Below, in pieces: positions 976-18,845 of a stretch of DNA of 18,845 nt (the first letter of the stretch is position 1; each line of letters starts with the position of its first letter). The DNA is from Paramicrosporidium saccamoebae KSL3 (lineage: Eukaryota; Fungi; Cryptomycota). The notes under the pieces are model-generated. The model was not told the origin of the DNA and did not search any database. It saw only the letters and a program-made list of their open reading frames with translations. The stretch lies in assembly GCA_002794465.1 (NCBI GenBank), contig MTSL01000087.1, positions 4,119 to 22,963 on the forward strand, written 5' to 3'. Position numbers and translations under genes: made by a program.

Positions 976-1402
976 CTATTAAAGTATATGGCATATAGGC
1001 AGCCATCGTTAAATCATCGGATTGTGGGGCCGCTATCTGGGTGAAACCCGCAAGTCACAAGCAAATGCTATCCAACAAATCGGATCATTAACCTCACAGT
1101 TCTATTAAAGTATATGGCATATAGGCAGCCATCGTTAAATCATCGGATTGTGGGGCCGCTATTTGGGTTGGATTTACCATTAGCCAGCGGATACTGCTTA
1201 ACAGAGTTGTATCACTAACCTCACAGTTTTATTAGAGTATATGGCATATAGGCAGCCATCATTAAATCGCCGGGTTGTGAGGCCGCTATATGGGTGAAAT
1301 CCGCAAGCCACAAGCGAATACTATTCAACAAATCAGATCACCAACCTCACAGTGTTATTAGAGTATATGGCATACAGGCAGCCATCATTAAATCACCGGA
1401 TT
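976..1402. repeat. Tandem array of ~126-bp units (3 full copies + 1 partial)
   Basis: Units start at about 976, 1102, 1229 and 1355 (periods 126/127/126). Shared core TATTARAGTATATGGCATAYAGGCAGCCATCRTTAAATC; full units end in AACCTCACAGT. Unit 1 has stops in all six frames. Confidence 0.95.
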
Positions 1403-3128: not shown

Positions 3129-5297
3129 ATGAGCGAAGGGGCAGGTCGAATTCCAAAACTTGTCATTCCACGGCTTGTCATCAAAACTGCGCATGATGAC
3201 ATTGGGTCCACTATTCAGAGCCACCTAACTGCGTCTGACCATTCTCGACGACTGAGCACGGCCGCACCCAGAGGCACATCGGACTGCATCCCCGTGCGAG
3301 AGCTCTTGTCTAGCATTTGCCAAAAGTGCTACCACGATTTTGAAAATCTCCTGGAAGTGTCGTCTCGAATGAACATTGTAGAAAAGAAGCGTGATGTTTT
3401 GCGCTTGCTTCGTGAACAAAGTGAGCGGTTTGTAAAGCTAGTCTCTCTGACGCGCTGGATTTCTTGGACTGGTGAATTGTCCTCTGCCGAGGCGGTCTGC
3501 GACAAGCTCTTGCTGGTGCAACAGGAGCTACTTGCCATTGCCGATTCCCTTGTACATTCCTCCACCGACGCTCGGCTGATAAAGTACAATTTTGTGTGAT
3601 TACTGGTGCTATTGCTAGACTCCCCCCGCCCGATGTGTCGCAAGTGTTTAATCTTGTCTTTAAACGCCCACTACCCAGCCCTCGCAGCTTGCAGGTACAT
3701 TTTTAGCTATACACCATAACCTACAGCGGCTCTTGTCAGAGACTGACACGCCAGTGAGAGACAAGGAGCTGGAGACTGTGGCGAAATATTACTCTCACAA
3801 AATCAAGGGTGCAGACCAATATTCTTTGACGTTTGGTAACATCGTCCTGCCTTTTTAACGCCTTTAGAAAATGCGACGCTGGTGGCGGAGGATACAACTG
3901 GATGGAAAGTTACCTTGCGTCTGTATCCCACCAACGCTGAGCCTCAATGGTTTGTTGGATCAATCGTGGGACCATGTACTGCCAGTCTATTGATTCTCAC
4001 TTTTTAGCTCAATCTCTTGCCCAGGCTCTGTATCGGCGTTTTTCCTTGGCGTGGGATCCCTCAAATCCAAATCTCCAGCGGCTCTTCAAAGTTATTCGTA
4101 CCATTCCCACCCGCTCTCATCATTACAGGATCGGCCGTAATCGGTAACTATAAGCATGAAATTACATCTGCCATTGACAGGCTCGCAAAAGTCATCGTAG
4201 TGCCAATAAGCACCACTTTGTGTGGGACAATTGTGACCGTGTCCACTGCATGCAATACTTTTCAAAAGCTCTCCTCAGAGATTGATTTGAACACTGGGGA
4301 ATCGGGTTCTCCGTCTTCCGCTGGCTTCCTTTATCAATTTTCACAGCGCCATCTCGCAGATTCTTTGGAAAAACTGGAAGCAATAGCCCTCGACAAGATC
4401 CGCAGCGAAGCATTGCTGGAAAATGTCGTCTGTTGCCAGCAAGAGGGGCATGTAAAGTGTTCATTCTTGGGGTCAGAGTCATTTTTCAGCTTTGATGGCG
4501 ACCATTTAAGATTCACTAGCGGCTCCGAGGCAACTTTAATGAGCACCCGGTCCAGCGAGGGTGATATGGCTGACTATATTTCCCAGTCTTTGATGAAATT
4601 CAGCCGCCAGTGCATGGGTGAGCGTGTTTCCGAATGCTGTCGACCTCTTTTGAAATTGGGCGTTTCTGAACGCTCTGTAGGCCAAGAAATCTTGGCTATG
4701 ACTCTGAGCGACTTTCCTCGGTGCTTTCTCCTGTTTGAGTCTCTCGATAACGGCTCTATTGGGATCCGCTCTCTCTCATACGATTTCTCCCTTGATGGTT
4801 TGAATGACCAACCCATTCCGCTTGGCACAATGGAAAAGGCCGAGTTTTTGCGTGCCTTGTACGAACAAACCTAAAACTGACATTGTAGAGTTGAACAGGA
4901 CATTGCGCCCTTTGAAGGCATTATTTCTCCAGTCTTAAACATACAAATGCTGCGAGCGCTTCAAGAATCAAAGCTCGTGACCAAAGCAGTCGGAACCAAG
5001 TTGGATGTCCTGAATGCGCCAATCTTGTTTCCCGTGGAGCGGTGTCAGATCTCGGCTATATCTGGTGAAATGACAGTACACTCCCTGCCGCTCTTACTGT
5101 AGATTGAACTGTGCCTTGATCCCGAATTTGTGCCGCGAGAATCAGATTTTCCGAGTGGTCCTAACGTAGTTATAGAAACAGATCGAGCTGTGATCCGGCT
5201 CTGCTCTCTCTCAGTCTCGGATGCAATCCAAAAGACTGAAAGAATATCGCTCGAACTTTATGAAGCCACGAGGCAACGATTTACGCTAAAAGTGTAA
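3129..5297 (+). CDS. MED14: Mediator subunit 14 (Rgr1), ~649 aa, 8 exons
   Basis: IPVRELLSSICQKCYHDFENL..EKKRDVLRLL..RFVKLVSLTRW is the Med14 N-terminal signature. Introns 3584-3618, 3695-3726, 3836-3867, 3976-4007, 4098-4128, 4859-4888 and 5076-5102 give one open frame of 1950 nt. Confidence 0.85.
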
Positions 5298-6700: not shown

Positions 6701-6897
6701 GTCATATTCTGGGTCTCTTTTGTGTAGATATGCTATGCTATGATGTGTTCTAGTGTGGTATAGTCTGGTATGGTGTATTTTGGTGGCTTTATGTAATGTG
6801 TTCTGGTGTGGCATGCTGTACTGTGCGCTCCCCACTATAGCATACATCCTTATTACACCCCTTACACCCTCCCCCACTCTGTGGCCCAGAATATGAC
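6701..6897. repeat. 13-bp perfect inverted repeat enclosing a degenerate pentamer-period tract
   Basis: GTCATATTCTGGG (6701-6713) and CCCAGAATATGAC (6885-6897). The interior is G/T-rich then C/A-rich with ~5-bp periodicity (tgcta tgcta tgatg tgttc tagtg tggta..). Confidence 0.75.
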
Positions 6898-6935
6898 CCT
6901 CTTTACGAGTCGTACCAACACGCTTACTTTTAGAC

Positions 6936-7328
6936 ATGGTTAGAATCAGCGTGTTGAACGATACTCTTAAGAGCATTTACAATGCCGAGAAGCGCGGAAA
7001 GCGCCAGGTTCTTGTCCGCCCCGTCTCCAAGGTCGTCATCAAGTTCTTGTCTGTCATGCAAAAGCACGGCTACATTGACGAGTTTGAAATTATTGATGAC
7101 CACCGTGCCGGTAAAATTGTAGTCCACCTGAACGGTCGCCTGAACAAGTGTGGTGTCATCTCTCCCCGCTTTGACGTAAAGCTCCCTGAATTGGAAAACT
7201 GGATCAACAACTTGTTGCCATCTCGCCAGTTTGGATTCATTGTCTTGACCACATCTGCTGGTATTATGGATCATGAAGAGGCTCGCCGCAAGCACACTGG
7301 TGGCAAGATTCTCGGATACTTTTACTAA
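6936..7328 (+). CDS. RPS15A: 40S ribosomal protein uS8 (S15A/S22)
   Basis: 130-aa [50 protein letters not shown], near-identical to eukaryotic S15A/S22. Confidence 0.99.
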
Positions 7329-7632
7329 GTGGTGTCGAGATTCTTGAATATTACAGCCGCAATCATTAAATATACTACTATTGTGAACAATGTCCGCCCC
7401 CTATCAGCGGTCAACGATCCAGAGGTCAATGATCGGCGGGTCCAATCCAGATAGTAATCTTGCGGATGATGCTCTATAAAGCGCTTTTAATCAAAAACGA
7501 CTTTACTACACACTACGCACTATACACTACACACAGAGCAGAATAAAGTCAGAATCCAAATGCGGTAATTTCGGAAAGAATATAAACAAAGTGTTTTTCC
7601 ATAAATTATCGATACTTTCCAGAGGGTGCACC

Positions 7633-10600
7633 ATGCTCCTGGACTGGATAGATAGTTTGGGGCTCTTGGAGCATGATCCAGGTAGCTTCATCCACATAGC
7701 TCATTAATTATTAGAATCAAATGTGCTACTCTGTTTTCCGCCACCCATTCGCAAGGTCATTATCACCGAGGTAACAAACTACCTGTACCAGTCGAGCACG
7801 GTGGCCGGCATGAACACCAACTCTTCGAGTGCTGCTAGCACCCCTACTGCGCTCGCTACATCACTGGCAGCGGGAAACTTTGGTGGGGCTGCATATGCAG
7901 TCTCGGCAACGACTCCTACCGGACTGGGCTCGGACGGGCTGCAATGCCTCAACAGTCTATTCCATGTGCGTTGGATGATGGAGATTGTCGGACAGGCATT
8001 CACCCTCCCGCTGGAAGACATTAATGTTGCAAGCAATGCGGCTGCCATCTACATTCAGTGGCTAGTCGAGCCAAACAAGAGACCGCTTGCAATTCAAAAG
8101 GCCGACTATGAAACTCGCCAGTGGTTCCTGCAAACCCTCTTTCGCCACATTTCGCTAGTTTTCCAAGCAAAAAAGGTTGACGGGGTGGGTGCCGCAAAGC
8201 CACTGTTGGCTACTCTGGCTAGTAAGCATGTCGAGCTGTGCAAGCTAATGCTGCGTACCCTCTCGCAAACGGCAATGTCGTCCTCTCTTATCACAGATCA
8301 CGAGAGTGGCTCGGCGTTGTCGGGCACTTCCTGGAAGGTCTTGCTACGAGTTCTTCTCGGAGTCACCGATTTTCTCCTCCAAAAACCCAGCCAGCCCTAT
8401 TGCTATCTGTCCGAGGAACTCGGAGAACAGCTCTTGTCCATTCTAATGGAGCTTTGGATGAGATCGCAAATCTTTTCGTCCGAACTTTGGACTCTGCTCA
8501 AGACTCTATATCCACGATGGACCCATCGGATGACCGCCATCACTCAATGGAGTGCCGTGTCTCTGGCCTTGACGCAGCGGGTCACAAAGATTCTGTATGG
8601 ACAGGGCACCTCGGCTGTTGTTTACACTGTGCACTCCAATCTCGTCACATTGGATCTTTCGGATCAATATGCCGTCTATGCTTGGCACCAAGTTTTGCAT
8701 ATTATTGGCAGTCCGAATGGCATGAACCCGCAAATCTTCTTCCGCAGTGTTCTAGGCATGGAAAAGCTCGTGCAAGTGTTCCACTCTATCGGAAACGTTG
8801 AAAATGCCGGAGCCTTGCAGCGCTGTTTCCCCGACGGCAATACCATTCTTCATCTCTTTGGGTCTTGGCTATTTGAAGCCGTCAATCGAGACGCTCTTGA
8901 CTGCGCAGAGGGCCGTGCACAGGCATTTGGTGTACTCTGTCGCATCTTTTCCCACCCCCAACGACGCAACCCATTCTTATCAACGTATCTGCATCAATTC
9001 TATGCCGCTGTCATTGAAGGCCTCAAGGGAGACCTGCTTTCCCTAGTGTTCATCGTTGTCAACTGCGAGGACATTTTCGCGCTCCAGATTCCCGGTGTCC
9101 GCATCCTTGTTGCTCCGTTTGTAAAGTCCCTTCGACGGATCATTCCAAAACTGGAAAAGCCTCTTCGAGTCAGCCTAAACTTGGATGATTTGCGCCGTGC
9201 CTGTTACAAACTCCTCTGCACCATCTTTGGCTTCTGTGATCATTTCGGTAATGCTCTGGTGAGGTGCCTGAGCCCCTCTTTGGAAGGGCTTACTGTCCAA
9301 TCCATCGAGGATGCAGAGACCCCTCGTACCCCTCAGAAGCCTGGAGACGAAGAGTTTGCTGCTCAACTAAAGGCACTATATCGGCCAATTCTCGGGAATT
9401 TGGAGATGGAATCTGGCTCGTTGAGCCATGCCAGATACTGGATTTTCGAAATGTTAGTTTCATCATTCCTAGATGAAAAAGATTCGGGAAATCTTCGCTA
9501 TCTCATCAACTCTCTCACCTCTTTCACCATTGACGATGCGCATCAAACTCCTGGCATAGTTGCAATGGTTGTCGATTTATTGAGGGTGCAGCTTGGGGCT
9601 GGAAAGTGGACCGTGGACGTCTGTCTTGTCGCAATAGAATCTCTTTGTCAATTTTCCGCCTTGGAATCCGTCGTCTCCGAACAAGACCCCAAGGCAGTTC
9701 GTCGACTGGTGCTTTCCTTATGCGAATATTCCCACGCTTTAATCTCGCGGAATAATCTTTCCGTCTTTTTGAAGCCAATCATCTGCACTCTCGATTGTCT
9801 ACTGGACTGGATTATTGGCACCGATTCGTGTTCCCTGTGGTTCTCATCTGACGCAGAATGCCAATCGGCAGTCATCAACCTGTTCACACGAGCCCTCCTC
9901 TATGGAAGAGAATCTGGGAAGCGTAACGAAGGCCAAGAAGTCCACACCTCTCCGGTTGCAAAGTCGGCTGGCGATTCGCGCATTCAGAGTCCCAGCTATT
10001 CGCTTGCTACAAGTCCGTCAATGTCCAGTGTCATGGCGATGCCGATAAAGTCTCTCGAAGGGCAACTTGTCAGCACTGCTGAGATTGCACTTGCCAGACT
10101 CTTACAACATTATGGCTGTGGTCTTTCCAACCCCTTCTTCCCTGTCCACACTTCGTCCCTTTTGAACGAGTGTCTGCTGTTGAATAAGAAATCCGACAGC
10201 GCTTTGGACTTTGTTTCCGGAGGCCCCAGAAAGATTTCTAGCTTGACTAGGGAAGAGCTGCAGGACATGCGATACTTTATTCTCAATGGGAGTACCATTG
10301 TGTGCTTTATCGAGAGGCCCGCGGAAGCTAATCTCAGAGTGGGGCACATGAAGGAAAGCCCAGTGACAGAGTTGGTCGCTCTGCTGCGATCATTCAGTGG
10401 CAAGTCGGCTTGGGAGAGCTCTCTTGTATATACCACAGATTCAGAAAAGTACCGCCAGCTCTTGTCTGTAAGCTCCTTACAAGGCGAAGATCCCACCGGA
10501 AAAGTAGAATTTGATTCCATCAACTCTATCAACGCAACCGTTGACGCAGCCATCGACACAGCCATCAACACTGACCTCTTTGCATGCACAAATCATTTGG

Positions 10601-11919
10601 CCGACTCGTTAAAGGACCAACTTGCCTTGATAGAAGCACACCCAGAGCTCGAGTCGGTATCATTGCAGCTAAATGAGATTGGCCCCGTTTTTAACTCTGA
10701 TGCAGCCGACTCTCGCTTTGCCCGTGATGACAAGCGTGCTCTCAATTATACCTGCATTGAAGGCCTAGCTAGGGAGCAAATCAAAAAGACCAAGAGCGTA
10801 CTTATTCAGGAAGGGGACGCCCTGCGTAGTTACGGGGCAAGACCAACCCCAGCCTTGACTGCTGACTCTCAATACGCTCGTCTGCTGCTGTCACAGCTTG
10901 GCATGGCATCTTTAAAGGCACGCGACTCGGCTTTGAAGCTTCCCAGCTGCATTGAACTGTTGTCTGATTTGGAGATACTCGATTCATTGCCGGAAAGAGA
11001 GACTCTGAGCTGTTCCGTGTTTTACATCAAATCTGGCCGGCTCAGTCTACAGGATATCCTCGATGAGGAAATAGTAAGCAAAGATTATGCCCAGTTTGTT
11101 CGCACGCTTGGCTGGCCCGCAGATCTCAAAAAACATCCCGGCTGGTCGGGCAGTCTGACAAGCAACATTTCCTCTACCATGCCCTACTTTTCCAACAATG
11201 ACATTGAGATTGTCTTTCATGTTCCCTCACTGATGAATCGCAAAGCACTTGAAGATCTGGGTAGCGATTGCAATTCTTCTTGTCGCAGCCACAATTCACC
11301 TCCAGGCAACCATAATCCGCCTCTGGGTAGCCATAATCCGCCTCTGGGTAGCCATAATCCGCCTCCAGGTAGTCATAATCCGTCTCTGGGTAATCAACCT
11401 CCTTGTTGTGTGCATCCGCTTGCGGGCCATGCTTCGGGGCTCTACAAAACTATTGCAAACGACATGGTGAGCATTCTTTGGATTGAAGACTTGGAGGAAA
11501 TGCTTACCCTGCCGAGCAAGTTGCAAACCCGCTCCATTGTCTACATTTGCGTCAGTCCGCTCTCAGACCCCGAGTCTACTGGGTTGTACCGGATTCGCAT
11601 AATGGTCACCAGCGCGGCATCAGTGGCCATGTCCTCTGGAAACGGGCAGAATTCGGTAGCAGGCCAGAGAGGCGATGAGGCTGCTTTTCTGTTCGGTCCA
11701 CTCTTGGATGGAATGATTATCCGGCGTGAATCTTTGGGACGCCTTGTTCGAGAGACAGTCATCTCCAGCTGCCTCTTTTGTCTCTACGGCATCCAAAGCC
11801 AACAAAAGCCACTGGCAAAACGTGCCCAATTTATCCATCACGTGGCAAACAAGTATCGTCTAATGAATCTCACTCCGGCCAAATACTACAACGAGCTAAT
11901 CTACAATGCCGTCTTGTGA
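7633..11919 (+). CDS. RALGAPB: Ral GTPase-activating protein beta subunit-like, ~1417 aa
   Basis: Exon 7633-7681 plus a 33-nt intron (7682-7714) gives MLLDWIDSLG..ESNVLLCFP, similar to the RalGAPB N-terminus. VRWMMEIVGQAFTLPL, ILHLFGSWLFEA and a C-terminal RapGAP-like region (FVRTLGWP..HPGWSG..PYF..EIVFHVPSLM) are also present. Confidence 0.85.
11290..11394 (+). repeat. Coding 21-bp tandem repeat x5 (HNPP[L/P]G[S/N]) inside RalGAP-beta
   Basis: cacaattcacctccaggcaac / cataatccgcctctgggtagc x2 / cataatccgcctccaggtagt / cataatccgtctctgggtaat. Confidence 0.95.
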
Positions 11920-12280
11920 TATGGAAAGTATGATACGTAGATGTACTGTTTTGTAATAGTAAAGACTGTGATTATGAGATATAGGCTGGGGGCTATGAAA
12001 TGTAGGTTGGGACTGTTACGTGGTGTGGTGGGGTGAGAGTATTACCACGGCGGGTCTAAATGTGCGGCAGGGAACTACCAATCAATTGGTATGGATTCGC
12101 CAGCATAGTCTTCAAACGTTAGAGTCAATTTTCCCATCCCATCCCTTGCCTCTGATTCTCATTTCTATATATTGGCACTAACACCCAGCACCCAACACCT
12201 AGGTAAATATTTCATTACCTCACATGACCATGGTGCCAATATAAGTGGGCGACAGAAAATTATTTATTACCAAATGATCG
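11915..12280 (+). repeat. Degenerate pentamer tract plus partial copy (D) of dispersed element
   Basis: G/T-rich tract with ~5-bp period at 11915-12035. GTGGTGGGGTGAGAGTATTACCACGG (12025-12050) resembles GTAGTGGGGATAATACCACGG. TACCAAATGATCG (12268-12280) is identical to 212-224. Confidence 0.6.
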
Positions 12281-12323
12281 CCAGCGTAGTGTGTCAGTCT
12301 TCTGTTTCTCCCCCCTATTGGTA

Positions 12324-12867
12324 TTAGTCAGCCTTGTCTTGTTCTAAAAATTTCCTAAAAATTAAAATCCCATCCCGACGCACCTTCGGGCGCGTAGCAG
12401 CATCTCTTGCTTTCGCTGCACCAAAAGTTTTTCCCTCACACTTTGGTCTTTGGTCCAAGTCTCCGAGTCTACTTTGATTGGGGGCTCTTCAACGAGATCC
12501 GGCAGCAACTTTATCTGGCTCAGGGTGCTCTGAACACGTGAAAAAGTCGCGTTAGATTTACCTGTGCAGTCGGATTTGCGCGCGGCGCCGGTGCTCTGGA
12601 GGGATAACTTGGGCTTATTGTGAGGAGCCTCTCTATTGCAGCCTGTACAGAGCCGCCGCGAACCAGCTCGGACCGAATTACAGATGTTGGAACGTTGGGA
12701 AACATGGTTGATAATTGATTAATGGCTTCGGTCGGTGGAGCGCGAGGCTGCTCAAGCATACGATTATCTAAGCGGTTAACGGAGCACCGTCAGCGGTTAC
12801 TAAATATCCAACGTACAAGGACAATAGTGAGGGCGAGCCCGACAACAACCGGAATAGTCTCGCTCAT
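12324..12867 (-). CDS. CUE1: Cue1-like ERAD factor (N-terminal TM, CUE domain, Ubc7/G2-binding helix), ~149 aa
   Basis: Introns 12800-12768, 12561-12530 and 12383-12355 join the TM segment (IPVVVGLALTIVLVRWIF), the CUE domain (MFPNVP..IRSEL..GSVQAAIERLL) and the U7BR-like W..REKLLVQRKQEMLLRARRKF. Confidence 0.88.
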
Positions 12868-12967
12868 GCTCAACTGTCCAATAGAATTCCAGCCATTGAA
12901 TAGATCCTAAAATGGACACTTGCAAGCCAAACCGAACCATCCACGACTACAGCCACTGTCGTTATCC

Positions 12968-14957
12968 ATGGCATCAGTGCGCATAGTCTTTAGATGCTGG
13001 ATTAGGGAGATTCGGCGCCTAAAGCGCGTCTTTTTACTCGTCTGCACCATCATGCTCGTCTCCTGGCTATACACTTGCACTACTACTCCTCCCCGCCTTC
13101 GATTACTGCAATTTTTGTCACACCGAGGCGCACTGAACCAGACGATCGAAAATTATCAGGCTACAAGCCAGAACAAGTATGCGTATGCAACCCTTCTTTG
13201 CGATGATGTCATGACAGACGCAATTAAGGTGCTCATATACTCCCTGAAGAAGAATACCGATTTGCCCTTTCTGCTGCTGGTCCTCCCAGGCGTACAACAG
13301 AGAGAGGAGCTCGTCCAGCTCGGCGCTGAGATTCACGAGATCAGCATGCTCGATTACCCTTTTCGCGTGACTGCAGAGAAAACGGCCATCAACAAAATGT
13401 GTCGTTACAGTAAACTGCACATTTGGAAGTTTATCGAGTACAAGCGAATCATCTACATTGATGTCGACTGTCTTGTGATGCAAAGTTTAGATGGCGCCTT
13501 CAAGTGGCCCGAGTTCAGCGCAGTACGAGATGCTGGAGACACATTCAATACTGGGCTGTTCGTCCTGGAGCCATCTCTGCAGACTTGGGAAAGCATGCGT
13601 GACTCTTACTTTACCGCCCCATCCTATAATCAGGGAGATCAAGGTTTTATTAATTGGTTCTTTCGAAATGCAACAAAAACTGCCCTTCCCGTTCGCTACA
13701 ACACGGTGTGTAAGAATAAAGGCCATGCCACCTGGCCGCTAATGAAGCGCCAGGCCAAGATGATCCATTACACGAGCGAGACGAAACCGTGGAATTTCTT
13801 TGCTTCGCCCCATAAATACTGGCGCCAGAATTTTGACGCCCCCATGTATTACTTGTGGACCCGCACGTTTCGGCACATTTGCCAAAAATTACGAATCGGT
13901 ATGCAAACTGGACCGTGTCTAACACCACATAGATGTGCATGATCCCAAAAAGCCAATGTGGCTCAACATTAAACGGTCGGCGGAGGTTTGTGATCGGTTT
14001 TATGCATCGATTGAAAATAGCGACCTACTTGACGGGCGACGAAATGACAAGATTAGCGTCATATTTACAAAGTGGCGGAACATTAAAACTTTGACAAATG
14101 CGATTCACCATTATCGATTTATTTTGGAGCCGGTCGTGTGTAAGCTGTACATTAGCTGGAATCCCAGCCTTGGAAAGCCGGGAATCGAGCTGACTCGACT
14201 AAAGTTTCTCAAAGAAGGCCCTCCGGTGGAAATAGTCTACCACCGCTACGAATCCACTAGCAATATTTGGAGCCCAATAGCGGGACTGGCTACCAAGGCC
14301 GTCTTCCTTGCTGATGATGAGCACTTGCCGGATCTCGAAAAAATGGAAATTGCATTTGAAACGTGGAAGAATAATCCACAGTCGCTGGTGGGATTCTTTG
14401 CCCGGTATCACACACGACAGAAATTGGTTGACCCATTCCAGGCCGACATGTCCGGGATGGATCCAGCACTGCCATCTGTAAACGTTACCGACGTCCCGAT
14501 ATTACACCAGCCCGTGTCAGTTGTAGACGAACATCATCTATGGATTTACAACATTACCAGTGCTCGAAGACCGCGTCCATACTCGCTGCTTGCTTCACAA
14601 ATGCTCATGATCAATACCGAATATCTCTTTGTCTACTCCTGCCTCCTCCCCGAGAGGATCCATCGTCATATCGATGAGCAAGGAGAGGATTCGGCCGATC
14701 TGGCAATGAATGTAATGATCGCCGGAATGACTGGTTCACGGCCAGTTCTGGTCAAGTCAGACTTTGTCGATCCTGAGAGCGGAAGATTTGTTGGAGAATC
14801 CTGGGCTCTGAATCGAGGACAAATACTGAAAGATCTTGTCCGAATATTCACTGGTGGTACCCGTGACCCTCTACAGTACAACAGTGTTTCAGTGGCACAA
14901 TTTAACAAGATTCCATTCAAGAAACGATCCGTCAAACAATGGAACAAGTATACGTAA
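12968..14957 (+). CDS. Type II membrane GT8-GT64 fusion glycosyltransferase, ~651 aa
   Basis: A 34-nt intron at 13899-13932 (GTATGC..CTAAC..TAG) joins the two ORFs in frame. TM anchor at the N-terminus. GT8 motifs YATLL, YSKLHIW, YIDVD, FNTG, GDQGFIN, HYT..KPW. GT64 motifs FLADDE, AFETW..P..LVGFFARYH, DLAMN. Confidence 0.9.
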
Positions 14958-15014
14958 TAAAAAAGTGTTAACAATAATAAGCCCTATATCCTGGCCAATA
15001 TATAAAGCGGATCA

Positions 15015-15330
15015 AGACTGTCGCGTAGTGGGGATAATACCACGGATTTTGTCAGGCGGAAAAAGGAGATGGGACGAGAGGAGAATTTCCTCAGTCAATC
15101 CAGCGACCCATTTATAGTCTCACAAATAACATAATCCTTCATCGATTGTTTTGATTATCCCTTCTCCAAACACCCAACTAATCAGTCTTCTACGTCACAC
15201 AGCATATCATTGATTAATTCGGCTCAAATGGCGATCCCACAAGCCATTCCAACCACATTAAGGGTGGCTACCTATAAAGAAGCCACATACTTTAATAAAA
15301 GAGTGTTTCACCCACCAACAGGGTGAAAGA
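15015..15330 (+). repeat. Most complete copy (B) of dispersed intergenic element
   Basis: 15019-15045 matches 16843-16869 at 26/27. 15164-15197 matches 16939-16972 at 26/34. 15215-15297 resembles the reverse complement of the 126-bp tandem unit. It ends in an 8-bp hairpin, TTTCACCC-accaaca-GGGTGAAA (15306-15328). Confidence 0.8.
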
Positions 15331-15386
15331 TGGGGCCATTACTACTACAAATTTCACGACCCCCCGGCTAAACCGAAAGTGCAAGT

Positions 15387-15671
15387 ATGGGTGAAAGTAA
15401 ATTTACTGACAGTGTTCATTATCTTTTAGAGGGCAAAGTACCATACAAAAAAGCTCCCAAGAAGGAAGCAAAGGAACTTGACGAGGTAAATTGCAGCATT
15501 ACAATACCAAAAGTTTATCCTTAGAGCGACATTGAATTCAAGAAAAAGCAGGCCGAGGAAGCCAAAAAGATTAAAGAACTGGCAGAAAAGGCCAAGAAGG
15601 GACCATTAGGTATGCTGCTGTAACATTTGCAAGACTTTGTAGGTGGAAGTGGGATGAAAAAGAGCAAGTAG
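15387..15671 (+). CDS. TMA7: Translation machinery-associated protein 7, 59 aa, 4 exons (missed by ORF track)
   Basis: Introns 15397-15429, 15486-15524 and 15610-15642 give MGEKGKVPYKKAPKKEAKELDESDIEFKKKQAEEAKKIKELAEKAKKGPLGGSGMKKSK. Confidence 0.92.
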
Positions 15672-15742
15672 ACTAAATCTGAATAAATCCGCCATCTCTT
15701 TTGTCGGTTTGATAATAAACATGATTGGGCCGCCTGGCAAGG

Positions 15743-16808
15743 ATGGAACACCCAAAGGATGCCGTGCAGGTCAGATCACCCACCACCCATTCCGCCATGG
15801 TTTTCTACAAAAATTTCATCGCCGGTGGAATCGCTGGTGCACTGTCACGAACAGTCGTGTCGCCGCTAGAGCGTGCAAAGATTTTGTTCCAAGTTCCTCT
15901 AGCCAAGCTGCTAACAATTATATAGGTGCAGAACAGTGCCAGCGTGTCAAATGTTGGCCGAGGGGGCCTTGACAGCATCATTAGAAGCGGCGTTGGCCAA
16001 GAGGGACTCGATTCTTTGGGTAGGACGGCCAGAAACGGCGTCGGTCGGGAGGGGTTTGACTCTCTTGGGAGCACATTTAGAAAGATCCTTCGACAGGATG
16101 GTGTCGTCGGGCTGTTCAAGGGGAACGGGACCAACATTCTCAGAATAGTTCCCTACTCATCCATGCAGTTTGCATCGTACGAGCTCTACTTGAAGGTAAG
16201 CCTAATATCAAGTCCATATAATGTAGCTCCTTTCGCGTAGAGCCGAAGAAATTTCCACACTGCAGAGGCTTTCTGCTGGGGCGTGCGCAGGAATTACCGC
16301 GGCGACATTTACCTATCCATTGGATTTGATCCGAACAAGACTGAGTCTCGTCACCACTTCCAAGTTTGGTGTAGTAGACGGACTGCTAAATGTATATCGC
16401 AACGAAGGCGGAGTCTTTGCTCTATATCGGGGCCTCACGCCCACATTATTGGGGATCGCTCCGCTAGTTGCTGTCAATTTCACCGTGTATGAGCATTTGA
16501 AGCAAAAAGCTCGAGTTATTACGAGATGCAAAGATGTCTCTATACCCGCTCGTCTTGCTTGTGGGGGCATTGCTGGTGCAGTTGCACAGACCATTACATA
16601 CCCCTTAGATGTTTTGCGCCGTAGATTACAGTCAAGCGGACTCTTGGGTTTTAATTACACTGGCATGACTGAAGCAATCGTTCGAATGTACCGAGAAGAG
16701 GGGATATCGTCTTTCTATCGGGGATTGCTACCAAATTATCTAAAGATGGTCCCGGCCATAAGTGTGAGCTTTGTTGTATATGAAACTGTACAGAATTTTT
16801 TGACATAA
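15743..16808 (+). CDS. Mitochondrial carrier (SLC25), YPR011C/SLC25A42/Leu5-like group
   Basis: Introns 15893-15925 and 16196-16226. Three carrier motifs ([30 protein letters not shown]), plus [17 protein letters not shown] and [17 protein letters not shown]. Start at 15743 or 15797. Confidence 0.93.
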
Positions 16809-16839: not shown

Positions 16840-16990
16840 TCGTGTCGCGTAGTGGAGATAATACCACGGCCTAGTTTAGGCGAGAAGAGAAGCTGTTCAC
16901 TGCTAACCCTAGTATAGTATGGATACACATCTCACTGTCCTCAAATACCCGACTAATCCATCCTCTACGCCATAGTCTCATGATCGTTTT
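16840..16990 (+). repeat. Copy (C) of dispersed intergenic element
   Basis: Carries block 1 (16843-16869), block 2 (16878-16911) and block 3 (16933-16958), shared with the copies at 15019, 1451 and 7. Confidence 0.8.
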
Positions 16991-18787: not shown

Positions 18788-18845
18788 ATGGGTGATGGGA
18801 TGGGATGGGATGGGATGGGATGGGATGGGATGGGATGGGATGGGA
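18788..18845 (+). repeat. (TGGGA)n pentanucleotide tract running to the end of the window
   Basis: 10 perfect TGGGA units at 18796-18845, preceded by a degenerate ATGGGTGA. Confidence 0.97.

What the first reader, a model, noticed from the sequence alone, without database searches (positions are those of the whole stretch)
12968..14957. GT8-GT64 fusion: candidate single-chain, two-step plant-type GIPC sphingolipid glycosyltransferase
Seen: one TM anchor, a GT8 domain and, after a 34-nt intron, a GT64 domain. The GT8 part (AYATLL..YSKLHIW..FNTGLFVLEPS..SYNQGDQGFIN..HYT..KPW) resembles, as recalled, Arabidopsis IPUT1/PGSIP6. Established: in plants IPUT1 (GT8) adds GlcA to inositol phosphorylceramide, then GT64 enzymes (GMT1, GINT1) add Man or GlcN(Ac), whereas yeasts mannosylate IPC with Sur1/Csg1 (GT32). 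Inference: the fusion couples two consecutive steps and would make glucuronic-acid-containing GIPCs in a fungus-like organism. Homologous fusions may already exist in databases, but I know of no assigned function.
Basis: partly seen in the sequence, partly recalled or inferred. Interest (0 to 1): 0.7.

Follow-up and report, generated by a model that had tools for sequence, protein, structure and literature searches.

The report
Two-enzyme sugar-transferase fusion, function untested
This gene encodes one membrane-anchored protein that joins two different sugar-adding enzymes (GT8 and GT64); the fusion is real and widespread in early fungi, red algae and protists, but nobody has shown what it makes, and the proposed role in plant-type membrane sphingolipids is plausible but unproven.

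Summary
Window 12968-14957 (+) encodes a 651-aa type II membrane protein: an N-terminal anchor, a glycogenin-like GT8 domain and an EXTL2-like GT64 domain, joined across a 34-nt intron. Relatives carry an intron at the same position and phase (36-38 nt, diverged interior), and more distant relatives have one uninterrupted ORF. Separate genes are therefore very unlikely. Both catalytic centres are conserved across 38 fusion homologues.

The fusion is not new. It occurs in chytrids, Mucoromycota, Microbotryomycetes, a lipomycete yeast, a metchnikovellid, red algae and many metagenome lineages. It is already annotated "GT8 + GT64", with no assigned function.

The specific IPUT1 resemblance is not supported. 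The quoted motifs are generic to glycogenin-like GT8. The IPUT1 C-terminal membrane domain is absent and the DxD-His spacing differs. No IPUT1 sequence could be fetched for a tree.

The sphingolipid (GIPC) idea remains a reasonable inference: every characterised GT64 enzyme acts on a glucuronic-acid acceptor, and the domain scores closer to plant than to animal GT64. Against it, Mucorales carry the fusion while Rhizopus delemar had no detectable IPC.

Best reading: a bifunctional Golgi enzyme that makes a Hex(NAc)-alpha-GlcA-alpha unit on an undetermined acceptor.

The parts
12968..13898 (+). Exon 1: start codon, cytoplasmic tail, TM anchor, stem and GT8 domain (residues 1-310 plus the first base of codon 311)
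   Evidence: the N-terminus is conserved with P0001
13019..13075 (+). Signal-anchor / transmembrane segment (residues 18-36), preceded by an Arg/Lys-rich tail
   Evidence: hydropathy scan; AF2 helix 2-38; a single N-terminal TM is the rule across the fusion family
13169..13897 (+). GT8 (glycogenin-like GT-A) catalytic domain, residues 68-310
   Evidence: Pfam PF01501; glycogenin E 2e-23; Foldseek glycogenin TM 0.75-0.80
13460..13468 (+). GT8 DxD motif, D165-V-D167 (Mn2+/UDP-sugar binding)
   Evidence: D165 in 38/38 and D167 in 37/38 fusion homologues; aligns with the glycogenin DAD
13766..13768 (+). GT8 His267, third Mn2+ ligand (equivalent of glycogenin His211/212)
   Evidence: 38/38 conserved; ligand assignment from PMC5888932
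13899..13932 (+). 34-nt phase-1 intron, GTATGC...TCTAAC...TAG, lying in the linker between the two domains
   Evidence: an intron at the same position in L001 (38 nt), L002 (38 nt) and L004 (36 nt) with diverged interiors; absent in P0002/3/5/8
13933..14957 (+). Exon 2: linker helix, GT64 domain and TAA stop
14037..14948 (+). GT64 (EXTL2-like GT-A) catalytic domain, residues 346-649
   Evidence: Pfam PF09258; EXTL2 E 5e-10; family HMM envelope 346-649; Foldseek 1on8 TM 0.80
14313..14321 (+). GT64 DXD motif, D438-D439-E440; aligns with the EXTL2 DDD
   Evidence: alignment to EXTL2; D 32/38, D 32/38, D/E 30/38
14697..14699 (+). GT64 Asp566 in the (C/S)xD(I/L)AMN motif; aligns with the second Asp of EXTL2 CDDIAMN
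   Evidence: 36/38 conserved
14424..14591 (+). Insertion of about 55 residues in the GT64 domain (residues ~475-530), specific to the window's own clade and partly disordered
   Evidence: family HMM positions ~133-165 are covered only in the closest relatives; pLDDT below 50 at 490-502; unaligned against EXTL2

Best explanation
The gene encodes one type II, Golgi-lumen-facing, bifunctional retaining glycosyltransferase. A short basic tail and a single N-terminal anchor hold a flexible stem. On that stem sit two Mn2+-dependent GT-A catalytic domains packed into one compact unit.

Shown:
- It is a single chain.
- Both folds are present.
- Both metal and nucleotide-sugar motifs are intact and conserved across the family.

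Inferred: the two domains act one after the other on the same glycan.
- The GT8 module adds an alpha-linked sugar, most likely glucuronic acid from UDP-GlcA.
- The GT64 module then adds an alpha-1,4-linked GlcNAc (or mannose) onto that GlcA.
- The product is a Hex(NAc)-alpha-GlcA-alpha-R unit.

The reasoning is that every characterised GT64 enzyme uses a GlcA residue as acceptor (EXT1/2, EXTL1-3, plant GINT1 and GMT1). In the exostosins, the fused partner domain is the one that supplies that GlcA.

The acceptor R is not determined. A repeating acidic polysaccharide or a glycoprotein glycan is about equally likely.
For: Single chain:
- Intron position and phase are conserved while length and sequence diverge.
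- More distant homologues have one continuous ORF.
- A separate GT64 gene would start 13 nt after the GT8 stop and would have no anchor.

Both domains look active:
- D165/D167/H267 are conserved in 37-38 of 38 homologues; D438/D439/E440 in 30-32 of 38; D566 in 36 of 38.
- AF2 gives pLDDT 86.9 and pTM 0.82.
- Folds match glycogenin (TM 0.75-0.80) and EXTL2 (TM 0.80).

Lumenal type II topology: one N-terminal hydrophobic segment here and across the family.

A functional link between GT8 and GT64:
- The same pair is fused in dozens of deep lineages.
- It is fused in the reverse order in streptophytes.

GT64 acts on GlcA acceptors: the EXTL2 acceptor analogue is GlcA-beta1,3-Gal (PMC9178029); GMT1 and GINT1 act on GlcA-IPC (PMC9113257).

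The GT64 domain scores closer to streptophyte GT64 (58-90 bits) than to EXT/EXTL (34-48 bits).
Against: - No biochemical or genetic data exist for any member of this fusion family.
- Donor sugars cannot be read from sequence. Glycogenin-like GT8 enzymes use UDP-Glc, UDP-Gal, UDP-GlcA, UDP-Xyl or UDP-GlcNAc.
- The GT8 domain is nearer to glycogenin than to the PGSIP7/8 plant proteins I could obtain. This does not favour a glucuronosyltransferase.
- The GT64 DXD is less strictly conserved (about 32/38) than the GT8 one.
- The compact two-domain packing is a prediction only.
Confidence: 0.5

Rival explanations
1. The fusion is a single-chain GIPC head-group synthase: the GT8 domain makes GlcA-alpha1,2-inositol-P-ceramide, as plant IPUT1 does, and the GT64 domain adds Man or GlcN(Ac), as GMT1 and GINT1 do. 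Plant-type GlcA-GIPCs would then exist in this organism. This is a special case of the best explanation, with the acceptor fixed as IPC.
For: - In plants, these same two CAZy families catalyse consecutive GIPC steps (PMC9113257).
- The only non-animal GT64 enzymes with a known function are GIPC enzymes.
- The GT64 domain scores closer to streptophyte than to animal GT64.
- Mucoromycota have AUR1 homologues but lack SUR1/CSH1/CSG2/IPT1, which leaves an unfilled IPC-glycosylation step (PMC10629195).
- A second GT8-type enzyme, A. fumigatus GntA, adds GlcNAc alpha1,2 to IPC (PMC5954224). Its GT8 family assignment is from my memory.
- The fungi whose GIPC structures are known are not those found here to carry the fusion.
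Against: - Rhizopus delemar had no detectable IPC or MIPC and is aureobasidin A-resistant, as are other Mucorales, yet Mucorales encode the fusion (PMC11595932).
- Microsporidia are reported to have lost complex sphingolipid metabolism, yet Amphiamblys keeps the fusion.
- There is no IPUT1-type C-terminal membrane domain, and the DxD-His spacing is 102 against 134.
- GlcA-IPC is regarded as plant-specific.
- IPUT1 orthology could not be tested.
Confidence: 0.3
2. The fusion is a co-polymerase like the exostosins (GT47-GT64) or LARGE (GT8-GT49). The two domains alternate to build a repeating disaccharide polymer, for example an acidic GlcA/GlcNAc or GlcA/Man chain, for the cell wall, capsule or a glycoprotein.
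For: - The bi-domain Golgi glycosyltransferases listed in PMC9178029 (exostosins, chondroitin synthases, LARGE) are all thought to make alternating polysaccharides.
- Foldseek also recovers EXT1/2, EXTL3 and LARGE1 as two-domain matches.
- Authors of fungal and red-algal genome papers have guessed at acidic or sulfated polysaccharide roles for GT64 and GT8-GT64.
- This reading is compatible with Mucorales that had no detectable IPC.
- From memory, and untested: several carrier lineages (Mucorales, Lipomycetaceae, Rhodotorula, red algae) make GlcA-rich heteropolysaccharides.
Against: - No polymer with an all-alpha GlcA/HexNAc repeat is known to me in these organisms.
- No direct evidence exists.
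- Both domains are retaining GT-A. The known co-polymerases pair a retaining with an inverting domain.
Confidence: 0.25
3. The two domains do unrelated jobs, or the GT8 domain transfers a neutral sugar (Glc, Gal or Xyl) rather than GlcA. In that case the product is not a GlcA-containing unit.
For: - The GT8 domain is closest to glycogenin (UDP-Glc) and to the Skp1 alpha-galactosyltransferase Gat1 (UDP-Gal) among solved structures.
- It is nearer to glycogenin than to PGSIP7/8 in distance terms.
Against: - The recurrent and ancient fusion of just these two families, in both orders, argues for coupled steps.
- All characterised GT64 enzymes need a GlcA acceptor.
- Self-glucosylating glycogenin function is excluded by the membrane anchor, and no Tyr aligns with the glycogenin acceptor Tyr195.
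Confidence: 0.2
4. There are two separate genes or transcripts: a GT8 protein ending at the stop at 13940-13942, and an independent GT64 protein starting at ATG 13956.
For: - No RNA evidence was available.
- Prokaryote-style gene callers split the locus in metagenome records.
Against: - The gap would be 13 nt.
- The GT64 product would have no anchor or signal.
- The intron has canonical GT...CTAAC...AG signals, and its position is conserved while its length varies (34, 36, 38, 38 nt).
- Relatives have continuous ORFs.
- Named full-length fusions exist in many sequenced genomes.
Confidence: 0.03

Closest known systems
Uncharacterised GT8-GT64 bi-domain glycosyltransferases. Examples: Amphiamblys 'glycosyl transferase, families GT8 + GT64' (P0041); Rhizophlyctis rosea 'Exostoses (Multiple)-like 3' (P0014, P0016, P0020); Jimgerdemannia and Endogone; Rhodotorula; Mucorales; Batrachochytrium; Galdieria; Delisea 'GT8-GT64 double module enzymes'
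   Same: Same architecture: N-terminal anchor, GT8, then GT64. Alignable end to end at 31-38% identity over 80-92% of the query. Same conserved catalytic residues.
   Different: The window's own clade is known only from metagenome and Logan contigs (49-94% identity). It has a GT64 insertion of about 55 residues and a linker intron. No member has a demonstrated function.
Plant GIPC pathway: IPUT1/PGSIP6 (GT8), then GMT1 or GINT1 (GT64)
   Same: The same two CAZy families; retaining GT-A chemistry; lumenal orientation. The GT64 domain scores closer to streptophyte GT64 than to animal EXT/EXTL.
   Different: In plants these are separate polypeptides. IPUT1 has a C-terminal multi-pass membrane domain and a longer DxD-His spacing (134 against 102), both absent here. 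Orthology was not tested. The plant relatives I could retrieve (PGSIP7/8) are only 26-30% identical over about 175 residues.
Glycogenin-1/2 (GT8) and the Skp1 alpha-galactosyltransferase Gat1
   Same: Best sequence and fold matches for residues 70-282 (E 2e-23, 26-30% identity, TM 0.75-0.80). DxD, His, Lys and DQG motifs are shared.
   Different: Those enzymes are cytosolic and soluble. Glycogenin self-glucosylates Tyr195. The window protein is membrane-anchored and lumenal, with no aligned Tyr, and it carries a second catalytic domain.
EXTL2 and the GT64 domains of EXT1/2 and EXTL3 (heparan sulfate alpha-1,4-GlcNAc transferases)
   Same: GT64 fold (TM 0.80 to 1on8); the DXD and the D(I/L)AMN motifs align. 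The principle of a bi-domain type II Golgi enzyme, whose partner domain supplies the GlcA acceptor, is the same.
   Different: The partner domain here is a retaining GT-A GT8, not an inverting GT-B GT47. Sequence similarity is low (20% identity, 34-42 bits). Heparan sulfate is not known outside animals.
LARGE1/2 (GT8-GT49 xylosyl/glucuronosyl co-polymerase)
   Same: A type II bi-domain enzyme with an N-terminal GT8 module, recovered by Foldseek (rank 45).
   Different: The second domain is GT49, and the GT8 module belongs to a different subfamily (TM only 0.25-0.27 over the whole chain).
Streptophyte long GT64 proteins with C-terminal GT8-like domains (P0219 Diphasiastrum, P0231 Riccia, P0253 Chara). 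These may be the GINT1 class; this is unverified.
   Same: GT64 and glycogenin-like GT8 modules in one chain.
   Different: The order is reversed (GT64 first). The GT8-like modules are divergent (DVE and DLC in place of DxD) and barely reach Pfam GT8. Their GT8 domains are not the nearest relatives of the fusion GT8.

Membership tests
CAZy GT8, glycogenin-like clade | Match to the family profile above the curated threshold | tested here: met
   PF01501 59.1 bits against a cut-off of 24.3; glycogenin E 2e-23
CAZy GT8, glycogenin-like clade | DxD plus downstream His as Mn2+ ligands, on a GT-A fold | tested here: met
   D165, D167 and H267 are conserved in 37-38 of 38 homologues; Foldseek glycogenin TM 0.75-0.80
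Glycogenin proper (self-glucosylating primer) | Cytosolic soluble protein with an acceptor Tyr (Tyr195) | tested here: not met
   N-terminal membrane anchor; no Tyr at the aligned position
IPUT1 / PGSIP6 | N-terminal GT domain followed by a C-terminal transmembrane domain (PMC5888932) | tested here: not met
   Only one hydrophobic segment, at residues 18-36; the C-terminal half is a GT64 domain
IPUT1 / PGSIP6 | Mn ligand spacing D114/D116...H248 (134 residues) | tested here: not met
   Spacing is 102 in the window, 110 in glycogenin and 120 in PGSIP7/8
IPUT1 / PGSIP6 | Phylogenetic grouping with IPUT1 rather than glycogenin, GUX or GolS | not testable with these tools
   No IPUT1, GUX or GolS sequence could be retrieved. 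The mixed-seed search list was cut at 120 rows and filled with PGSIP7/8. No solved structure exists.
IPUT1 / PGSIP6 | UDP-GlcA:IPC alpha-glucuronosyltransferase activity | not testable with these tools
   Needs enzyme assay or lipid mass spectrometry
CAZy GT64 | Match to the family profile above the curated threshold, with an EXTL2-like fold | tested here: met
   PF09258 79.5 bits against a cut-off of 21.3; EXTL2 E 5e-10; 1on8 TM 0.80
CAZy GT64 | DXD motif and conserved Asp in the D(I/L)AMN motif | tested here: met
   D438-D439-E440 and D566 align with EXTL2 DDD and CDDIAMN; conserved in 30-36 of 38
Plant GMT1 / GINT1 (GIPC GT64 enzymes) | Grouping with plant GIPC GT64 enzymes | tested here: inconclusive
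   phmmer bits are higher against streptophyte GT64 (58-90) than against EXT/EXTL (34-48). In the NJ tree the fusions form their own deep lineages.
Plant GMT1 / GINT1 (GIPC GT64 enzymes) | Transfer of Man or GlcNAc onto GlcA-IPC | not testable with these tools
   Needs assay
GT8-GT64 bi-domain family (uncharacterised) | One chain with an N-terminal anchor, GT8, then GT64, alignable end to end with other members | tested here: met
   36 further GT8+GT64 representatives were found among the 137 new hits in the top 150 of the exhaustive GT64 search.
Bi-domain Golgi co-polymerases (EXT, LARGE, CHSY) | Two glycosyltransferase domains in one type II chain | tested here: met
Bi-domain Golgi co-polymerases (EXT, LARGE, CHSY) | Processive alternating polymerisation | not testable with these tools
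   Needs in vitro elongation assay

The most novel reading that the evidence does not exclude
The GT8-GT64 fusion is the ancestral eukaryotic single-chain synthase of the GlcA-containing GIPC core. Under this reading:
- 'Plant-specific' GlcA-IPC lipids also exist in early-diverging fungi, Pucciniomycotina, red algae and assorted protists. This would include Mucoromycota, which have AUR1 homologues but no SUR1, and in which standard lipidomics would miss such polar lipids.
- The plant IPUT1 plus GMT1/GINT1 pathway is a fissioned or rearranged version of this enzyme.
Probability: 0.25. Interest if true: 0.75.

Novelty: new member of a known kind. Interest (0 to 1): 0.5.

Why it matters
Fungal and red-algal GT64 enzymes have no known function, and the GT8-GT64 fusion is one of the few Golgi bi-domain glycosyltransferase types that has never been characterised.

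The fusion links two families that act consecutively in plant GIPC synthesis. It therefore gives a concrete, cheap-to-test prediction about what both domains do.

If the product is a GlcA-GIPC, three things would follow:
- the accepted plant/fungus divide in sphingolipid head groups would be overturned;
- the lack of SUR1/CSH1/CSG2 in Mucoromycota that have AUR1 homologues would be explained;
- the range of organisms with NLP-toxin-type GIPC receptors would widen.

If the product is a polymer, it would define a new exostosin-like co-polymerase for fungal or algal acidic polysaccharides.

As it stands, the window adds one more member from an unsequenced lineage to a catalogued but unstudied family.

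Tried and rejected
1. Separate phylogenies against IPUT1, GUX and glycogenin were not achievable. The three homologue searches returned fusions and close metagenome relatives. The mixed-seed profile search returned a list cut at 120 rows and dominated by PGSIP7/8. PMC12971971 indicates that PGSIP7/8 are not a good proxy for IPUT1, which that paper places in the GUX branch. PDB holds no IPUT1, GUX or GolS structure.

2. Rennie 2014 (IPUT1) and Ishikawa 2018 (GINT1) are not held.

3. An NJ tree of the GT64 domains, and NJ bootstraps of the GT8 domains (after a timeout), resolved no sister group for the fusion domains. Only distance and score rankings are reported.

4. Naming the exhaustive-search hits through cluster look-ups gave few names. 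That was enough for a taxonomic spread, but not enough to label GMT1 or GINT1.

5. The organism could not be identified.
   - There is no rRNA, tRNA or Rfam hit.
   - uS8 scores animal > plant > Dikarya fungi in PDB, which is uninformative.
   - The closest relatives are unnamed JGI, ENA and Logan contigs.
   - My guess is an early-diverging fungus or other opisthokont-like soil or aquatic microbe. This is a guess only.

6. Rejected readings:
   - Glycogenin function (topology, no acceptor Tyr).
   - Two separate genes (13-nt gap, no anchor on the second product, comparative intron evidence).
   - Coding antisense ORFs (no Pfam hits).

7. P0001's apparent 'no intron' turned out to be a 36-nt in-frame intron read through by the gene caller. 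It was therefore not used as evidence for an intron-less fusion.
Full report
**1. The observation**

The region 12968-14957 on the + strand reads as two long ORFs in different frames (12920-13942 and 13935-14957). Removing 13899-13932 (34 nt, GTATGCAAACTGGACCGTGTCTAACACCACATAG) joins them in frame into a 651-aa protein. Without splicing the frame ends at a TGA at 13940-13942.

Pfam places Glyco_transf_8 at residues 83-276 (59.1 bits, cut-off 24.3) and Glyco_transf_64 from residue 353 onward in two stretches (79.5 bits, cut-off 21.3). Against PDB sequences, residues 70-282 match glycogenin-1/2 (E 2e-23) and the Skp1 alpha-galactosyltransferase Gat1 (E 5e-18). The C-terminal half matches EXTL2 (E 5e-10), EXTL3 and EXT1/2.

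One hydrophobic segment lies at residues 18-36, behind an Arg/Lys-rich tail. Antisense and out-of-frame ORFs across the gene hit no family.

**2. One gene or two**

No RNA data were available, so I used relatives.

- Metagenome contigs that carry the same gene neighbourhood split the gene at the same place. The neighbourhood is uS8, a RalGAP-like gene, a CUE-domain gene on the other strand, GT8|GT64, and a mitochondrial carrier.
- The junction aligns as GAATCG|GT...TAG|ATGT in all four sequences. Intron lengths are 34 nt (window), 38 nt (L001, 93% protein identity), 38 nt (L002) and 36 nt (L004).
- Intron interiors differ far more than the flanks, and they include frame-breaking indels.
- The 36-nt intron of L004 happens to be in frame and stop-free. 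The database protein P0001 therefore carries a spurious 12-residue insert there.
- Homologues at 49-55% identity (P0002, P0003, P0005, P0008) have no insert and one continuous ORF across the junction.
- Many named genome annotations are full-length fusions.
- A separate GT64 gene would begin 13 nt after the GT8 stop and would lack any anchor.
- Candidate introns of 30-59 nt with the same GTAYG...CTRAY...YAG design lie at other ORF boundaries in the window (not verified individually).

I put the two-gene alternative at about 3%.

**3. Anatomy**

AlphaFold2, run with 38 fusion homologues, gives mean pLDDT 86.9 and pTM 0.82. The model shows:
- a helix at 2-38;
- a disordered stem at 39-67;
- a GT-A domain at 68-310;
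- a helical linker;
- a second GT-A domain at about 346-649, with one low-confidence loop at 490-502.

Foldseek matches domain 1 to glycogenins (E 3e-19, TM 0.75-0.80) and domain 2 to EXTL2 with UDP and a GlcA-Gal acceptor analogue (1on8, E 2e-15, TM 0.80). EXT1/2, EXTL3 and LARGE1 appear as two-domain matches at low whole-chain TM.

Catalytic residues across the 38 fusions:

| Domain | Residue | Conserved |
|---|---|---|
| GT8 | D165 | 38/38 |
| GT8 | D167 | 37/38 |
| GT8 | H267 | 38/38 |
| GT64 | D438 | 32/38 |
| GT64 | D439 | 32/38 |
| GT64 | E/D440 | 30/38 |
| GT64 | D566 (D(I/L)AMN motif) | 36/38 |

The K149, DQG224-226 and KPW273-275 motifs of the GT8 domain are also kept. Both domains therefore look active.

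The window's own clade has an insertion of about 55 residues in GT64 (about 475-530) that EXTL2 and most fusions lack.

**4. Distribution**

The fusion is neither rare nor new.

- The word-seeded search found 51 relatives. Nearly all carry both Pfam domains and a single N-terminal hydrophobic segment.
- Named carriers from that search are Rhizophlyctis rosea, Jimgerdemannia, Endogone, Galdieria sulphuraria, Microbotryomycetes and six Rhodotorula species. They also include Mucorales (Blakeslea, Cokeromyces, Mycotypha, Benjaminiella, Rhizopus, Thamnidium) and Amphiamblys, which is annotated 'glycosyl transferase, families GT8 + GT64'.
- An exhaustive HMMER search with the GT64 domain found 423 representatives at E<=1e-3. 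Most of the top 150 are again GT8-GT64 fusions.
- Cluster look-ups added Batrachochytrium, Irineochytrium, Bifiguratus and the yeast Dipodascopsis tothii. They also added Corallochytrium, which has another N-terminal region in place of GT8.
- A red-algal genome preprint counts '2 GT8-GT64 double module enzymes' and guesses at galactan synthesis. A lichen-yeast paper notes that fungal GT64 has no known role. I found no paper that characterises any member.
- The window's closest relatives (63-94% identity) are all unnamed JGI, ENA or Logan contigs, so the source lineage is apparently unsequenced. I could not identify the organism.

**5. Is the GT8 part IPUT1-like?**

They align equally with human glycogenin and with plant PGSIP7/8.

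| Feature | IPUT1 (PMC5888932) | Window protein |
|---|---|---|
| Membrane domain | N-terminal GT domain plus C-terminal transmembrane domain | Only an N-terminal anchor |
| Mn ligands | D114/D116/H248 | D165/D167/H267 |
| DxD-His spacing | 134 | 102 (glycogenin 110; PGSIP7/8 120) |

The only plant relatives I could retrieve are PGSIP7/8, at 26-30% identity over about 175 residues. A 2026 paper places IPUT1 in the GUX branch, apart from PGSIP7/8, so they are poor proxies.

In a trimmed alignment, the fusion GT8 domains are on average nearer to glycogenin (Kimura distance 1.63) than to PGSIP7/8 (2.17) or to the GT8-like modules of streptophyte GT64 proteins (2.32). NJ bootstraps resolve no sister group.

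The specific IPUT1 resemblance is therefore unsupported, and true orthology remains untested. Glycogenin function itself is excluded by the lumenal anchor and by the absence of the acceptor Tyr.

**6. What the GT64 part says**

phmmer bit scores of the window's GT64 domain:

| Target | Bits |
|---|---|
| Streptophyte long GT64 proteins | 64-90 |
| Angiosperm and grass short GT64 proteins | 58-62 |
| Sponge exostosin-2-like | 48 |
| EXTL2 | 42 |
| EXTL3 | 34 |

The domain is 'plant-type' in score, though not in a resolved tree.

From established knowledge, every characterised GT64 enzyme adds an alpha-linked HexNAc or Hex to a glucuronic-acid acceptor:
- EXT1/2 and EXTL1-3 act on GlcA of heparan precursors. 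The EXTL2 acceptor analogue is GlcA-beta1,3-Gal.
- GINT1 and GMT1 act on GlcA-IPC.

In the exostosins, the fused partner domain is the glucuronosyltransferase. By analogy, the fused GT8 domain most likely supplies an alpha-GlcA, as the GT8 enzymes GUX and IPUT1 do, and the GT64 domain caps it. This step is inference.

**7. The acceptor**

For IPC:
- The two families act consecutively on IPC in plants.
- A. fumigatus GntA adds GlcNAc alpha1,2 to IPC. Its GT8 assignment is from my memory.
- Mucoromycota have AUR1 homologues but none of SUR1, CSH1, CSG2 or IPT1. SUR1 is confined to Dikarya and flagellated fungi.
- The fungi with solved GIPC structures are not the ones found here to carry the fusion.

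Against IPC:
- Rhizopus delemar had no detectable IPC or MIPC and is aureobasidin-resistant, as are other Mucorales.
- Microsporidia are reported to have lost complex sphingolipid metabolism, yet Amphiamblys keeps the fusion.
- GlcA-IPC is regarded as plant-specific.

The negative lipidomics may have missed very polar GIPCs. That is my caveat and was not tested.

The main alternative is an alternating polymer. The known bi-domain Golgi glycosyltransferases are all thought to be co-polymerases.

My estimates are about 0.3 for the GIPC reading, about 0.25 for a co-polymerase, and about 0.2 for a non-GlcA or uncoupled product.

**8. Comparison and verdict**

The protein is a member of the catalogued but uncharacterised GT8-GT64 bi-domain family. 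It comes from an unsequenced lineage, and its clade has a specific GT64 insertion and a linker intron.

- It probably works like an exostosin in principle: the partner domain makes the GlcA acceptor and GT64 adds the alpha-hexosamine or hexose.
- It may work like the plant IPUT1 plus GINT1/GMT1 pair in substrate.
- It is not demonstrably a member of the IPUT1 or GMT1/GINT1 subfamilies.

Novelty: new member of a known kind. Interest 0.5: the architecture is already known, but the Rosetta-stone prediction is specific, testable, and would matter if correct.

Noticed in passing
window 18794-18845: A perfect (GGGAT)n / (GATGG)n pentamer array of about 10 copies runs to the very last base of the window, with the G-rich strand reading 5'->3' toward the end. 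It could be a telomere-like repeat at a contig end or just a microsatellite.
   Followed up: no
window 977-1402: A 126-bp tandem repeat of 3.4 copies at 81% identity, in an apparently intergenic stretch upstream of the choline/ethanolamine kinase gene.
   Followed up: no
window 7708-11916 (repeat at 11310-11392): A 1403-aa open frame encodes a RalGAP-like protein (RALGAPB_N plus Rap_GAP). It contains an in-frame 21-bp x4 repeat that encodes a GSHNPPL-type low-complexity tract between the two halves of the Rap_GAP match.
   Followed up: partly
window 6897-16805; L001, L002, L003: The gene order uS8, RalGAP-like, CUE-domain gene (minus strand), GT8|GT64, mitochondrial carrier is conserved in JGI metagenome contigs from three samples (3300042204, 3300037657, 3300037044). 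This points to a diverse, environmentally common lineage without a named genome.
   Followed up: partly
L004 1834-1869 (protein P0001): The database protein P0001 contains a false 12-residue insert (GNKPTKLNSFIL). A 36-nt, in-frame, stop-free intron (GTAATA...TACTAAG...TAG) was read through by a prokaryote-style gene caller.
   Followed up: yes
P0219 (Diphasiastrum, 913 aa), P0231 (Riccia, 985 aa), P0253 (Chara, 1095 aa), P0196, P0223, P0246: Streptophyte long GT64 proteins have the reverse architecture: an N-terminal GT64 domain followed by one or two divergent glycogenin-like GT8 modules (DVE and DLC in place of DxD). Pfam GT8 barely detects them. Plants have only one long GT64 class, so these may be GINT1 orthologues. 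That would make GINT1 itself a GT64-GT8-like fusion. Unverified.
   Followed up: partly
window 4859-4888, 12768-12816 (-), 15385-15429, 16177-16226, 16917-16975: Further candidate very short introns (30-59 nt) with GTAYG...CTRAY...YAG signals lie at or near ORF boundaries of neighbouring genes (Med14-like, CUE, mitochondrial carrier). This suggests a genome with unusually short introns. The frames were not checked individually.
   Followed up: no
window 12365-12967: The CUE-domain gene on the minus strand starts only about 100 nt or less from the ATG of the fusion gene, so the two probably share a short bidirectional promoter region.
   Followed up: no
P0178 (ENA, 446 aa): A PGSIP7/8-like GT8 protein with the C-terminal multi-pass membrane domain, found on an unnamed ENA contig and clearly divergent from the plant PGSIP7/8 sequences. 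This plant-type membrane-embedded GT8 class may therefore not be confined to plants.
   Followed up: no
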